Virus record (IMG/VR): IMGVR_UViG_3300028840_006257
Coordinates: 124,001-188,000 of that record
Length of the DNA: 64,000 nt
Reading direction: 5' to 3' (one strand)
The stretch's first letter is position 1. The number at the start of each line of letters is the position of its first letter. This document shows, piece after piece, positions 59,021 through 61,544 of this stretch. Under the pieces are notes generated by a model. That model made no database searches. It saw only the letters and a list, made by a program, of their open reading frames with translations, and was not told where the DNA came from. Position numbers and translations under genes: made by a program.

Positions 59021-59702
59021 TCACCACAGGCGCCGGAGATCTCCCTTCTGGTATGCCTCCCAAGTGGTGCGTTTTCGGGTGCGATGGTCCACGACCTGGT
59101 TGCGTTGGACGGCGATCGTCCGTCGTTTGTCCCCACGCGCTCCACGACCCACCTGGGCCTTCCTGTCGGCGTTCCGCCCCCGCGTCTCCCTAGCGTCGAT
59201 CTTGGCCTTGAGACGCGCCCTCAGGACGGCCAGGGCCGTTTGACGGTTGACGTGCTGGCTGCGACCGCCGTCGATCCTCACGGTGATGTCCGAGGGGCGG
59301 TGCGACAAGACCACGCAGCTGTCGGTCTTGTTCCGATGCTGGCCTCCCTTTCCGCTCCCGCGCGTGAACGACTCCTCGAGGTCGCGAGGGTCGATGTGGA
59401 GCTCGTGCTCCTCAGGCTCAGGAAGGACGGCGATCGTCACCGTCGACGTGTGGACGCGTCCGCGCTTCTCGGTCGGAGGGACCCGTTGGAATCTGTGACC
59501 CCCGGCCTCATGGCGGAACGCCGCCACGGCCCCACGTCCTGCGACGCGCATCAGGAGGAAGCCGGGTCTCGCCTCGAGGATCTCGTGGTCAAAGACCCTC
59601 CTGGGCCATGAACTTCTCGTACACCCGGTACTGGACGCGCACGAGGTCCTTGGAGTCGTCGCCGCCCTCGGCAGCCCTGATTTCCACGATCACTCGTTCC
59701 AT
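59021..59702 (-). CDS. RF1-type peptide chain release factor lacking domain 1, expressed via +1 programmed frameshift (~226 aa)
   Basis: Frame 0 (ATG 59702): MERVIVEIRAAEGGDDSKDLVRVQYRVYEKFMAQEGL-TGA. The +1 frame continues DHEILEARPGFLLMRVAG...EAGGHRFQRVPPTEKRGRVHTST...GSGKGGQHRNKTDS. Both parts align with RF1 domains 2-4. Confidence 0.88.
59588..59602 (-). promoter_or_regulatory. prfB-like +1 frameshift cassette AGGAGG-GT-CTT-TGA-C
   Basis: Internal SD at 59602-59597, CTT at 59594-59592, TGA at 59591-59589, C at 59588; the +1 frame joins the downstream RF ORF exactly. Confidence 0.88.
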
Positions 59703-59782: not shown

Positions 59783-60203
59783 CTAGAGGAATCCTGGAAA
59801 CGAACCCTGAAACTCGTAGTCCGATGCAAGCCTGATTCGCTTAGCCTGTTTGTTGCGGGAGGGTGCGACACGCAGAGAAGCTTTCCTTGTTCCAACATGT
59901 TCGACCGGTACTAAGTACACGGCATCCAACTCTGGTGAGTACACGGCAAAAAACTCGATTTCTTCTCGGTAGGCTCTCGTCTCGCCCGTGTTCCAGTTGT
60001 TGGAACATGTCGAAAAATTGAGGGCTCCTTTGAAGACCTTGCCGGTCTTGCACTGAATACGAACGAAACGACCATCCTGATCCACGACCAAATCGTACCT
60101 CTGTGAGTCTCCGAAGGGAGTCAGAACAACCAACCCTGCCCGCAAAAAATCTAGCAATCATTTGCGCTTCAGACCGTTCTCCGATCTCCTTTGGGGTTGC
60201 CAT
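59783..60203 (-). pseudogene. I-Ssp6803I-like (group I intron-type) PD-(D/E)XK endonuclease broken by one extra T in a T6 run
   Basis: Frame A gives MATPKEIGERSEAQMIARF and frame B gives FLRAGLVVLTPFGDSQRYDLVVD...RIQCKT. Removing one T at 60144-60149 joins them. Low GC. Confidence 0.8.
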
Positions 60204-60238: not shown

Positions 60239-60331
60239 TGGCGAGCGAGGAGGGATTTGAACCCCCGATGGGACTTGCGTCCTCTGGATTAAAAGTCCAG
60301 TGCGTTCGGCCAGGCTACGCGTAACTCGCCC
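60239..60331 (-). tRNA. tRNA-Lys(UUU), atypical: long variable arm, 4-nt acceptor-D linker, G73, encoded CCA
   Basis: GGGCGAG/CTCGCTC acceptor; GCGT/ACGC D stem; CTGGA-CTTTTAA-TCCAG anticodon arm; GGAC-GCAA-GTCC variable arm; GGGGG-TTCAAAT-CCCTC T arm. Confidence 0.88.
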
Positions 60332-60396
60332 ACAACTGATGGAGCAGGGCGCCGCGCGTTTGAGTCTGTGGTGTGTAACCGACATCGTCTTCTCGG

Positions 60397-60469
60397 TGAG
60401 CCGGGTGGGTCACGATCCCACGGCCTGCGGGTTAAGAGTCCGCCGCTCTGCCTACTGAGCTACCGGCCC
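60397..60469 (-). tRNA. tRNA-Lys(CUU), CCA not encoded, atypical T loop
   Basis: GGGCCGG/CCGGCTC acceptor, A73 then CCG; GCTC/GAGC D stem; GCGGA-CTCTTAA-CCCGC; GTGGG-ATCGTGA-CCCAC. Confidence 0.88.
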
Positions 60470-60595: not shown

Positions 60596-61477
60596 TCAGA
60601 CGATGCACTCGCACGGCCGGTTCTCGTTCTCCTCCTCCTGCTCCTGGAGGACCGGGGAGAAGTAGTCGAAGATCGTAGGGCGCCCGTGCCACTCGAGGGC
60701 CTCTCGAGCGTGGGCCCAGAAGAGGGACGCCTCCGTGTTCTCGGTCGCCTCCACCTTCGCCTCCCTCATGATCGCGAAGTCGGCCTCGAGCTCCTCTAGC
60801 CGGACGTTCCGCAGGATGGTGTGGCCGATGTGGGCCTCGGCCTTCTTGGCCTTCTCCCAGAGGTCGGGTCGGGTGCAGTAGACGATGTACCAGTGGCGCC
60901 TGCCGGCCCTGAGGCACGCCGTGCAGTTCGCGTGCTTGAAGACCCCGTAGGTAAGCGGCGGCTCTATCCCGATCTCCCTGGTGGACTCGATGGTGCGGCC
61001 GGTCCAGCGAGCGAGTGGGTAGTCGGTCTGGTATCCCATGTCCCCCAGGACGGCCGTGCGCCTCTCGATCCTGTGATCCTCGTACGCGTCGAACCCGTAG
61101 TAGACGACGCAGTTCTTCTCCGGTTCCATGTTCGCCGCGAGCCACTTGTGGAAGGGCTCCGTCTTGAACCTGTGCGTGCAGAGCACGGACGTGGCGCCGA
61201 CCTTGAAGCCCGTGTGCTTGATGCAAACGTCGAACTGGTCCATCGTGTCCCAGCTCGGATAGTTCGCGTACGTGATCTCGACTCCGAGGTAGCCGGCGAC
61301 CTCGCGCTTGAAGCGCTTGATGTCCGGGTCCTCGACCGACGGGTTGATGTCGTGGTTGAGGAGGATCAGATTCTCGGTCCCGTGGCGACGCGCGACCTCG
61401 ACGGCCACGAGCGCCGAGCTGTGGCCCCCGCTGAAGCACACGACGTGCTTCGTGGTCTCGTCGATCCTCGGCATCAT
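60596..61477 (-). CDS. PAPS-reductase-family / PP-loop protein with Cys clusters
   Basis: VVCFSGGHSSA (PP-loop), CTHRFK, YYGFDAYE..R, HANCTACLRAG, C-terminal CEC. Start refined to 61477 (SD AGGAG). Confidence 0.75.
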   Translation of the reverse strand: MMPRIDETTKHVVCFSGGHSSALVAVEVARRHGTENLILLNHDINPSVEDPDIKRFKREVAGYLGVEITYANYPSWDTMDQFDVCIKHTGFKVGATSVLCTHRFKTEPFHKWLAANMEPEKNCVVYYGFDAYEDHRIERRTAVLGDMGYQTDYPLARWTGRTIESTREIGIEPPLTYGVFKHANCTACLRAGRRHWYIVYCTRPDLWEKAKKAEAHIGHTILRNVRLEELEADFAIMREAKVEATENTEASLFWAHAREALEWHGRPTIFDYFSPVLQEQEEENENRPCECIV

Positions 61478-61544
61478 CTGGGGGTCTCCTAGAGGACGAC
61501 CAGCGAGGTCGCTCATTCTACGCCCCGACGGACCTCGGTCCTTT

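What the first reader, a model, noticed from the sequence alone, without database searches (positions are those of the whole stretch)
60239..60331. tRNA with a Lys(UUU) anticodon arm on a type II body with G73
The anticodon loop CTTTTAA is a canonical Lys loop, but the tRNA has a 17-nt variable region (4-bp stem, GCAA tetraloop), discriminator G and a 4-nt acceptor-D linker (TTAC instead of 2 nt). Long variable arms are normally limited to Ser, Leu, Tyr and Sec. Bacterial SerRS reads the long arm and ignores the anticodon, and G73 is typical of tRNA-Ser. This could be a Ser-charged AAA decoder, a remodelled tRNA-Lys resistant to anticodon nucleases such as PrrC, or a decoy.
Basis: partly seen in the sequence, partly recalled or inferred. 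Interest (0 to 1): 0.75.

Follow-up and report, generated by a model that had tools for sequence, protein, structure and literature searches.

The report
Phage lysine tRNA with extra arm
A jumbo-phage gene encodes a tRNA with the lysine anticodon UUU and the long extra arm normally seen only on serine, leucine and tyrosine tRNAs; it belongs to a widespread phage family for which I found no description, it most likely still accepts lysine, and the extra arm may protect it from tRNA-cutting defences.

Summary
A 93-nt tRNA gene lies on the minus strand at 60331-60239. It has a 7/5 cloverleaf, a 4-nt acceptor-D linker, anticodon UUU, a 17-nt variable arm, G73 and an encoded CCA. Rfam scores it 38.9 bits, and two metagenomes carry identical contigs.

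It is not a one-off. The window is part of a 213-kb phage record, and an exact-pattern scan found 47 viral contigs with long-arm tRNA(UUU) genes inside tRNA arrays. Cultured Caulobacter and Xanthomonas jumbo phages carry CUU versions.

The evidence favours lysine identity over serine:
- Acceptor stems copy those of co-resident ordinary tRNA-Lys.
- In this lineage G2.U71, an element essential for class I LysRS, marks 17 of 18 Lys tRNAs and 1 of 78 others.
- G73 and U73 also occur on ordinary Lys tRNAs there.
- The short arm with a 3-4-nt 3' tail resembles tRNA-Tyr, not tRNA-Ser.
- Most family members have A73.
- One Actinomycetota genome (46 tRNAs) has such a tRNA as its only UUU tRNA.

What the arm does is untested. 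Evasion of tRNA-Lys-directed nucleases is the leading idea. I found no description of this family in the literature searched.

The parts
60239..60331 (-). Whole tRNA gene, 93 nt including the encoded CCA (60241-60239) and discriminator G73 (60242)
60325..60331 (-). Acceptor stem 5' strand GGGCGAG. It pairs with 60243-60249 (CUCGCUC), and pair 2:71 is G.U
60321..60324 (-). 4-nt acceptor-D linker UUAC, where canonical tRNAs have 2 nt. Relatives have UUAA (L191) or UAUA (L004, L024)
60302..60320 (-). D arm: GCGU stem, 11-nt loop AGCCUGGCCGA with G18G19, ACGC stem. A26 is at 60301
   Evidence: two of the four D-stem pairs change on both sides
60284..60300 (-). Anticodon arm CUGGA-CUUUUAA-UCCAG; anticodon UUU at 60293-60291
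   Evidence: U28-A42 here corresponds to C28-G42 in L191
60267..60283 (-). 17-nt variable region: A, 4-bp stem GGAC/GUCC, GCAA loop, unpaired tail CAUC
60250..60266 (-). T arm GGGGG-UUCAAAU-CCCUC
60395..60469 (-). Ordinary type I tRNA-Lys(CUU), 63 nt upstream on the same strand. It has A73 and also G2.U71 (GGGCCGG/CCGGCUC)
59783..60203 (-). PDDEXK_5 endonuclease gene at the position where relatives L004 and L191 carry an ordinary tRNA-Lys(UUU). This is context, not part of the tRNA

Best explanation
This is a working elongator tRNA of a jumbo phage that reads AAA (and by wobble AAG) and is charged with lysine by the host's lysyl-tRNA synthetase. It is one member of a conserved family of phage tRNA-Lys genes that have acquired a class II body: a type II-like D arm, often a 3-4-nt acceptor-D linker, and a short variable hairpin (3-4 bp, GNRA loop) followed by a (C)AUC tail. 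In this phage lineage the lysine identity set looks like the one published for class I LysRS, namely U35, U36 and G2.U71 with a nearly irrelevant discriminator. That would explain why G73 is tolerated. In this phage it is the only UUU-anticodon tRNA in the 213 kb held, because an endonuclease gene occupies the place of the ordinary tRNA-Lys(UUU) found in relatives. Shown here: the structure, the family, its covariation, its Lys-type acceptor marks and its genomic company. Inferred: charging with Lys, and the type of LysRS. More speculative (about 0.3): the extra arm leaves LysRS, EF-Tu and the ribosome unaffected but hinders proteins that attack tRNA-Lys. Candidates are PARIS AriB-like nucleases, which read the 3' strand of the anticodon stem and the D loop, other anticodon nucleases, or the phage's own tRNA-depleting activity.
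For: Family: 47 viral contigs match a long-arm UUU pattern, and ARAGORN calls all of them at default settings. CUU versions occur in Caulobacter phage CcrBL9 and its relatives and in Xanthomonas phages XacN1 and BUDD. Structure under selection; the closest homologue (L191, 93% identical) has a compensatory change in the anticodon stem. Lys identity: (1) The best acceptor-stem match among co-resident tRNAs is a tRNA-Lys in 15 of 27 loci, with 14/14 positions identical in L005 and L044. (2) G2.U71 occurs in 17 of 18 Lys tRNAs, ordinary and long-arm, of G000, L004, L024, L191, L005 and L179, against 1 of 78 other tRNAs (Fisher p = 1e-16). For class I LysRS, G2-U71 is essential and A73 marginal (PMC9976931). 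(3) Of the immediate neighbours in arrays, 19 of 76 are Lys tRNAs against a background of 7% (p = 2e-6). (4) The discriminator is A in 39 of 48 family members. Long-arm Asn, Trp and His tRNAs in the same arrays keep G73, G73 and C73, as their anticodons predict. (5) Arm geometry is like tRNA-Tyr, not tRNA-Ser. (6) In an Actinomycetota genome with 46 tRNAs for all 20 amino acids, the only UUU tRNA is a long-arm one, whereas 20 relatives have an ordinary one. One AAA codon there lies at a K/R-conserved position. (7) AAA codons in this phage align with K in 15 of 23 cases, R in 3 and S in none. Sequence reproducibility. Possible link to defence: the published AriB targets are tRNA-Lys(UUU), Thr(UGU) and Asn(GUU) (PMC12409363). 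These three make up 7 of 16 long-arm non-class-II tRNAs in the less biased sample (p = 0.006).
Against: No expression or charging data exist, and no RNA run was listed. The host and its LysRS type are unknown. The two Gemmatimonadota-labelled MAGs that hold related contigs showed no class I LysRS, and the tRNA-Lys(UUU) found outside the phage-like contig in one of them has A2-U71. A general anticodon-free profile classifier is indecisive for this particular tRNA: Lys ranks 8th of 20, largely because of G73. G73 together with a long arm are, in E. coli, the two main serine elements. Long arms also occur on Ile(UAU), Trp, Met and His tRNAs, so the overlap with PARIS targets is not exclusive. Long-arm tRNAs do not keep the AriB site U36AAUC more often than short ones do. 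The evidence from AAA codons in the Actinomycetota genome rests on two sites, only one of them informative.
Confidence: 0.6

Rival explanations
1. A lysine tRNA whose extra arm has no adaptive role. The class II body would be a tolerated relic of recombination between tRNA genes in arrays, and the gene simply supplies an AAA decoder that a high-GC host has little of.
For: AAA makes up 3.0 per 1000 codons in the phage, against 31.7 for AAG, which fits ordinary codon compensation. L005 looks like a module swap: acceptor and anticodon stems identical to those of the ordinary tRNA-Lys(CUU) and a near-identical T arm, but a different D arm and V arm. No arm-specific partner protein was found near the gene.
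Against: The arm hairpin is maintained with covarying stems: 92% of family members form a stem of at least 3 bp, against 45% of shuffles, with 16 different 3-bp stems and a conserved GNRA loop and (C)AUC tail across very diverse phages. Ten of 44 loci keep both an ordinary and a long-arm tRNA-Lys(UUU), which argues for distinct roles.
Confidence: 0.2
2. A serine-accepting tRNA with a lysine anticodon. SerRS reads the long arm and G73, so AAA is partly translated as Ser.
For: A long variable arm plus G73 are the classical bacterial serine elements, and SerRS ignores the anticodon (PMC9976931; PMC7609411). Precedents exist in allo-tRNAs (PMC5389517) and nematode nev-tRNAs (PMC3333845, listed).
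Against: The tRNA has G2.U71 where bacterial tRNA-Ser conserves G2-C71, and phage tRNA-Ser in related arrays have G2-C71. The 4-bp arm has a 4-nt 3' tail, whereas co-resident tRNA-Ser have 4-8 bp and 1-2 nt. The closest homologues have U73 and most of the family A73. Non-A discriminators (G73 in L004, U73 in L024 and L191) also occur on ordinary type I tRNA-Lys of this lineage. The Ser profile has a median rank of 15.5 of 20 for the family. No AAA codon aligns with Ser.
Confidence: 0.07
3. A non-translating RNA: a decoy that soaks up a tRNA-Lys-directed nuclease, or a regulatory tRNA-like RNA.
For: The anticodon loop and the 3' stem strand (U36AAUCC) are fully canonical, as a bait would need. 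Some irregular tRNAs are charged but not used in translation (PMC5389517).
Against: The acceptor stem, T arm, G18G19, the G15-C48 pair, the encoded CCA and the Lys-type 2:71 pair are all conserved and covary, which a bait for an anticodon nuclease would not need. In one bacterial genome a family member is the only UUU tRNA.
Confidence: 0.08
4. Mischarging with tyrosine or leucine because of the class II body, or a decaying pseudogene.
For: The arm geometry resembles tRNA-Tyr, and U35 is a tyrosine element. ARAGORN's default threshold rejects the gene.
Against: G73 is an antideterminant for E. coli LeuRS and TyrRS, and E. coli LeuRS needs A15-U48 whereas this tRNA has G15-C48. All helices are intact, the sequence is identical in independent samples, and a 93%-identical homologue has a compensatory change.
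Confidence: 0.05

Closest known systems
Ordinary bacterial and phage tRNA-Lys(UUU) (type I, 5-nt variable loop)
   Same: Anticodon loop CUUUUAA, 7/5 acceptor-T helix, T loop, G18G19, and in this lineage the same GGGC...GCUC top of the acceptor stem with G2.U71.
   Different: 17-nt variable arm instead of 5 nt, a 4-nt instead of 2-nt acceptor-D linker, an 11-nt D loop, and G73 instead of A73.
Phage T5 tRNA-Lys(UUU), which neutralises the PARIS defence system (PMC11464382, PMC12409363)
   Same: A phage-encoded tRNA-Lys variant kept alongside or instead of host tRNA-Lys. It offers a possible shared logic of escaping a tRNA-Lys nuclease.
   Different: T5 escapes through point changes (U39A, A41C, U16C) in a type I body. 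Here positions 36-40 are canonical (C41 and C16 do differ from E. coli) and the change is architectural. No nuclease test exists for it.
Bacterial tRNA-Tyr (class II with a short arm)
   Same: A 3-4-bp variable stem with about 3 unpaired nucleotides on its 3' side, a type II D arm, and G15-C48.
   Different: Anticodon UUU rather than GUA, a Lys-type acceptor stem, and G73 in this member, which is an antideterminant for E. coli TyrRS.
allo-tRNAs (Mukai et al. 2017, PMC5389517)
   Same: Long-arm tRNAs with anticodons outside Ser/Leu/Tyr, found in metagenomes and phages. An 8/4 allo-tRNA with a Lys anticodon was seen once.
   Different: allo-tRNAs have 8/4 or 9/3 acceptor-T helices, Sec-like D arms and serine identity (G73 or U73). 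This tRNA is 7/5, and an eighth pair would be a U.C mismatch.
Nematode nev-tRNAs and eukaryotic nov-tRNAs (PMC3333845; Hamashima et al. 2016, cited)
   Same: Class II bodies carrying anticodons of class I amino acids.
   Different: By the title of PMC3333845, and from my own recollection of that paper, nev-tRNAs are charged with Leu according to their body. In the phage family the acceptor stem and discriminator follow the anticodon's amino acid.

Membership tests
tRNA (Rfam RF00005) | Cloverleaf scoring above the family's gathering score | tested here: met
   38.9 bits against 29, covering the full model 1-71. The minimum-free-energy fold is the cloverleaf.
tRNA (Rfam RF00005) | Two nucleotides (8, 9) between the acceptor and D stems | tested here: not met
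   Four nucleotides, UUAC. Relatives also have 3-4 nt, and covariation supports the D-stem register.
Class II (long-arm) tRNA | Variable region of 10 or more nucleotides forming a hairpin | tested here: met
   17 nt with a 4-bp stem and a GCAA loop. Across the family, 92% of members form a stem of at least 3 bp, against 45% of shuffles.
tRNA-Lys | Anticodon UUU or CUU with U35 and U36, plus A37 | tested here: met
   The loop is CUUUUAA.
tRNA-Lys | Discriminator A73 (class II LysRS identity) | tested here: not met
   This tRNA has G73. However, G73 and U73 occur on ordinary Lys tRNAs of the same phage lineage, and A73 is marginal for class I LysRS.
tRNA-Lys | G2.U71, essential for B. burgdorferi class I LysRS | tested here: met
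   GGGCGAG/CUCGCUC. In the lineage, 17 of 18 Lys tRNAs have G2.U71 against 1 of 78 others.
tRNA-Lys | Aminoacylation with lysine | not testable with these tools
   This needs an in vitro charging assay or analysis of the native tRNA.
tRNA-Ser | G1-C72 and G2-C71, conserved in bacterial tRNA-Ser | tested here: not met
   Pair 2:71 is G.U here. The reference statement is in PMC9976931.
tRNA-Ser | Long arm with Ser-type length and orientation (few unpaired 3' nucleotides) | tested here: not met
   This tRNA has 4 bp plus a 4-nt tail. Co-resident phage tRNA-Ser have 4-8 bp plus 1-2 nt.
tRNA-Ser | Discriminator G73 | tested here: met
   G at 60242. This is not specific in this lineage.
allo-tRNA / tRNA-Sec | 8/4, 9/3, 8/5 or 9/4 acceptor-T helix, with a Sec-like 6-bp D stem | tested here: not met
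   The helix is 7/5, the would-be eighth pair is a U.C mismatch, and the D stem has 4 bp with an 11-nt loop.

The most novel reading that the evidence does not exclude
The long arm, together with the widened acceptor-D linker, is a structural form of counter-defence. It would make phage tRNA-Lys, and likewise long-arm tRNA-Asn and tRNA-Thr, poor substrates for PARIS/AriB-like or other nucleases that grip the 3' strand of the anticodon stem and the D loop, while leaving charging and decoding intact. If so, jumbo phages carry a class of 'armoured' tRNAs, and some Actinomycetota have adopted one as their only AAA decoder.
Probability: 0.3. Interest if true: 0.85.

Novelty: new variant of a known kind. 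Interest (0 to 1): 0.6.

Why it matters
Textbook tRNA classification limits long variable arms in bacteria to Leu, Ser, Tyr and Sec. This finding points to a recurrent exception that databases quietly annotate as 'tRNA-Lys' or leave unannotated. These are 7/5 class II-type tRNAs whose acceptor marks follow their anticodon (Lys, and also Asn, Thr, His, Trp and others). They are spread over very different jumbo phages and appear to be fixed in a few bacterial chromosomes. If they are charged with lysine, LysRS, EF-Tu and the ribosome must tolerate a class II body. That would raise the question of what selects for the arm, at a time when tRNA-Lys has emerged as a favourite target of anti-phage nucleases. 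The question is directly testable, because cultured phages (CcrBL9 and relatives on Caulobacter, XacN1 and BUDD on Xanthomonas) carry family members. Such tRNAs could also serve as new scaffolds for orthogonal translation.

Tried and rejected
- **Alternative folds (8/4, 9/3, 8/5, longer D stem, linker pairing with the CAUC tail):** none gives extra pairs (inspection).
- **First profile classifier:** it was biased because the Tyr and Leu training tRNAs had been fished with the same pattern. The corrected version supports Lys for the family but is indecisive for this tRNA.
- **Donor of the class II D arm:** edit distances to co-resident Tyr, Ser, Leu and Lys tRNAs do not discriminate.
- **Phage-encoded synthetases:** no PF00152, PF00587 or PF01921 in the 213 kb held. 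No RtcB either.
- **Promoter and terminator scan:** nothing found.
- **RNA evidence:** no RNA run was listed.
- **Host via MAG labels:** no class I LysRS was found in either Gemmatimonadota-labelled MAG, and the tRNA-Lys(UUU) found outside the phage-like contig in one of them lacks G2.U71. An alphaproteobacterial MAG has class I LysRS but A2-U71. The host stays unresolved.
- **'Arm instead of loop mutations':** long-arm CUU, GUU and UGU tRNAs keep U36AAU39 about as often as short ones do.
- **Meaning of AAA in the Actinomycetota genome:** AAA is so rare there (6 against 329 AAG in 18.4k codons) that only two sites could be examined.
- **Neighbouring 306-aa PP-loop protein:** it is PAPS-reductase-like, is absent from relatives' loci, and has no evident link to tRNA.
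- **BLAST of a low-GC family member against cultured phages:** no match.
- **Literature:** nine searches found no description of long-arm tRNA-Lys in phages.
- **Genome G043:** flagged unpublished and used for no claim.

Full report
**What is there.** The window is bases 124001-188000 of a 213-kb IMG/VR virus record. The record has 65% G+C and CheckV estimates it to be 40% complete, so this is a piece of a jumbo phage. The record carries 15 ordinary type I tRNA genes, all on the minus strand.

- a 7-bp acceptor stem with G2.U71
- a 4-nt linker, UUAC
- a 4-bp D stem with an 11-nt loop containing GG
- a 5-bp anticodon stem with loop CUUUUAA
- a 17-nt variable region: one unpaired base, a 4-bp stem, a GCAA loop and the tail CAUC
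- a normal T arm
- G73 and an encoded CCA

Rfam's tRNA model scores it 38.9 bits against a gathering score of 29. The minimum-free-energy fold is the five-helix cloverleaf. Contigs from two separate metagenome runs, one from sediment and one from seawater, are identical across it. No RNA run was listed, so expression is untested.

**It belongs to a family.** I scanned the viral contig collection with an exact pattern: the anticodon loop, then a gap that only a long arm can fill, then the T loop. This found 47 contigs, many of 100-600 kb. All the matches sit in tRNA arrays, and ARAGORN calls them at default settings as 82-93-nt 'tRNA-Lys(ttt)'.

The family plan is consistent:
- a 7/5 acceptor-T helix
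- a 2-nt linker in 33 members, 3 nt in 9 and 4 nt in 3
- a variable region that is typically one base, a 3-4-bp stem, a GNRA loop (GAAA in 16, GCAA in 4) and the tail (C)AUC
- C48 in 41 of 48 members

The arm hairpin is under selection. A stem of at least 3 bp forms in 92% of members, against 45% of shuffled arms, and 16 different 3-bp stems close the tetraloop.

For the nine members with 3-4-nt linkers, the four standard helices are 98.9% paired. Twelve of 21 pairs change on both sides, which 0 of 500 shuffles reach, and slid registers collapse. The widened linker is therefore a real and conserved feature.

The closest homologue, L191, is 93% identical. It has the linker UUAA, U73, and a compensatory C28-G42 where the window has U28-A42.

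Cultured phages carry CUU-anticodon versions:
- Caulobacter phage CcrBL9 and at least six relatives, annotated tRNA-Lys
- Xanthomonas phage XacN1, annotated tRNA-Lys
- Xanthomonas phage BUDD, unannotated

In 185,579 species genomes the same pattern hits only 25 MAG contigs, many of them phage-like arrays.

**Which amino acid.** Several independent lines point to lysine.

1. **Acceptor stems follow the co-resident ordinary tRNA-Lys.** Where another tRNA-Lys lies in the held stretch, it is the best acceptor-stem match in 15 of 27 cases. All 14 positions are identical in L005 and L044, and 12-13 of 14 in L004, L015 and L024.

2. **G2.U71 is a Lys-specific mark in this lineage.** In the window's lineage (G000, L004, L024, L191) and in the related arrays L005 and L179, G2.U71 is present in 17 of 18 Lys tRNAs, ordinary and long-arm alike. 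It is present in 1 of 78 other tRNAs. The published identity set of class I LysRS requires G2-U71, U35 and U36 and gives the discriminator a marginal role. The same pair is an antideterminant for class II LysRS (PMC9976931). In line with this, discriminators of Lys tRNAs in this lineage vary between A, U and G, even on type I bodies. One ordinary tRNA-Lys(CUU) in L004 has G73.

3. **The genes sit next to Lys tRNAs.** Long-arm genes lie beside other Lys tRNAs 3.4 times more often than expected. In the window the partner is tRNA-Lys(CUU), 63 nt upstream.

4. **Discriminators follow the anticodon.** Thirty-nine of 48 family members have A73. Long-arm tRNAs with Asn, Trp and His anticodons in the same arrays carry G73, G73 and C73, as their anticodons predict. 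The bodies therefore follow the anticodon's amino acid, which is the opposite of what is reported for allo-tRNAs and nev-tRNAs.

5. **The arm resembles tRNA-Tyr, not tRNA-Ser.** It has 3-4 bp and 3-4 unpaired 3' nucleotides, like co-resident tRNA-Tyr. Co-resident tRNA-Ser have 4-8 bp and 1-2 nt. Bacterial tRNA-Ser also conserve G2-C71.

6. **A bacterial genome depends on one.** In an Actinomycetota MAG of 4.0 Mb with 46 tRNAs for all 20 amino acids, the only UUU-anticodon tRNA is an 85-nt family member in an ordinary chromosomal setting. Five similar MAGs also carry the long-arm gene. A BLAST search with an ordinary tRNA-Lys(UUU) found none in any of them, although it recovered tRNA-Lys(CUU) in only three, so the negative result is weak for the other two. 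Twenty relatives do have an ordinary 74-77-nt tRNA-Lys(UUU). AAA is very rare in that genome. Of two AAA sites examined, one aligns with K or R in all 11 homologues and the other lies at a variable charged position.

7. **AAA is used as lysine in the phage.** AAA codons in the window's phage align with K in 15 of 23 cases and never with S.

For this particular tRNA, G73 additionally argues against LeuRS and TyrRS, for which G73 is an antideterminant. G15-C48 argues against an E. coli-type LeuRS.

An anticodon-free profile classifier ranks Lys first most often for the family, with a median rank of 3 against 15.5 for Ser. It is indecisive for this member.

**Local history.** In L004, and as far as the held stretch of L191 reaches, the order is Lys(CUU), long-arm Lys(UUU), ordinary Lys(UUU). 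A truncated release-factor-like gene follows the Lys cluster in L004, L024 and L021. In the window a PDDEXK_5 endonuclease gene occupies the slot of the ordinary tRNA-Lys(UUU). The long-arm gene is therefore the phage's only UUU tRNA in the DNA held. AAA accounts for 3.0 per 1000 codons in the phage. The 213 kb held encodes no Lys- or Ser-type synthetase, so a host enzyme must charge the tRNA.

**What the arm is for.** This is the open part. A neutral relic is unlikely, given the conservation of the hairpin and the co-existence of ordinary and long-arm tRNA-Lys(UUU) in 10 of 44 loci.

tRNA-Lys is a repeated target of anti-phage nucleases. The PARIS effector AriB cuts tRNA-Lys(UUU) between positions 40 and 41 and is modelled to hold the D loop with its second subunit. 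[quoted passage not shown] The variable region emerges directly 3' of the cut strand. In a sample of arrays not baited with Lys, these three anticodons account for 7 of 16 long-arm non-class-II tRNAs, although they make up 16% of the tRNAs (p = 0.006).

This is suggestive only. Ile(UAU), Trp, Met and His tRNAs also occur with long arms. Long-arm tRNAs do not retain the AriB site more often than short ones. Nothing is known about how such nucleases treat a class II body. I give the shielding idea about 0.3.

**Comparison with known systems and novelty.** The tRNA works like, and most probably is, a tRNA-Lys. It fails two textbook features of the family, a 2-nt linker and A73, and it adds a class II arm. 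It is not an allo-tRNA or a Sec-type tRNA, because it is 7/5 and has no long D stem. It does not meet the serine marks other than G73.

Nine full-text searches found no description of long-arm tRNA-Lys. Neither did the reviews of non-canonical tRNAs and tRNA identity that I consulted. Subscription-only literature was not covered. I rate the finding a new variant of a known kind. It is moderately to highly interesting, chiefly because the family is broad, contradicts a textbook rule and is testable in cultured phages.

Noticed in passing
window 59021-59551 (-): A 176-aa ORF with an RF-1 (GGQ) domain and only the last 40 positions of the PCRF domain. It has PPT where RF1 has its PxT motif. It covers only the C-terminal half of phage family phrog_19918. 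It is conserved directly after the Lys tRNA cluster in L004, L024 and L021. No RtcB is present in the record.
   Followed up: partly
window 59783-60203 (-): A PDDEXK_5 endonuclease gene sits where relatives carry an ordinary tRNA-Lys(UUU). It reads in two overlapping frames around a T6 run (ATG at 60203, TTG at 60157). The sequence is identical in contigs of three runs, so this is not an assembly error.
   Followed up: partly
L004-L167 (for example L013, L015, L021, L029, L054, L127, L130): Long variable arms also occur on phage tRNAs with Asn(GUU), Thr(UGU/CGU), Ile(UAU), Trp, Met, His, Gly and Lys(CUU) anticodons. They keep the discriminator expected for their anticodon. Conversely, some phage Leu, Tyr and Ser tRNAs are short (71-77 nt).
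   Followed up: partly
L172-L174, L176, L177, L182; G001 (L193-L238): Six Actinomycetota MAGs carry a solitary 85-87-nt long-arm tRNA(UUU). In the one examined (G001/L172) the setting is chromosomal and it is the only UUU tRNA among 46. No ordinary tRNA-Lys(UUU) was found in the others. Twenty relatives have an ordinary one.
   Followed up: partly
G001 L227, L230; relatives L244, L246, L247, L249: The same Actinomycetota group has unusually short tRNA-Leu(UAA) and tRNA-Leu(CAA) genes of 76-78 nt. They keep a type II D arm, but the variable region is only 7-9 nt.
   Followed up: no
window 60395-60469 (-): The ordinary tRNA-Lys(CUU) has an A31.C39 mismatch at the base of its anticodon stem. Position 39 is one where a change abolishes AriB cleavage of E. 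coli tRNA-Lys.
   Followed up: partly
L260:1205-1310 (Xanthomonas phage XacN1): A tRNA-like gene with an insert of about 35 nt in the anticodon-arm region lies between the annotated tRNA-Ser and tRNA-Lys. It is not annotated in the record.
   Followed up: no
L009:1065-1139; L050:6979-7070; L071; L161: Phage arrays with long-arm tRNA-Lys also hold a tRNA with a UUA anticodon (ochre-suppressor type) and long-arm tRNAs with a CUA anticodon.
   Followed up: no
window 60596-61516 (-): A 306-aa PP-loop protein resembling PAPS reductase (phrog_424) has no Pfam match. It lies directly upstream of the Lys tRNAs and is absent from the corresponding loci of relatives.
   Followed up: partly
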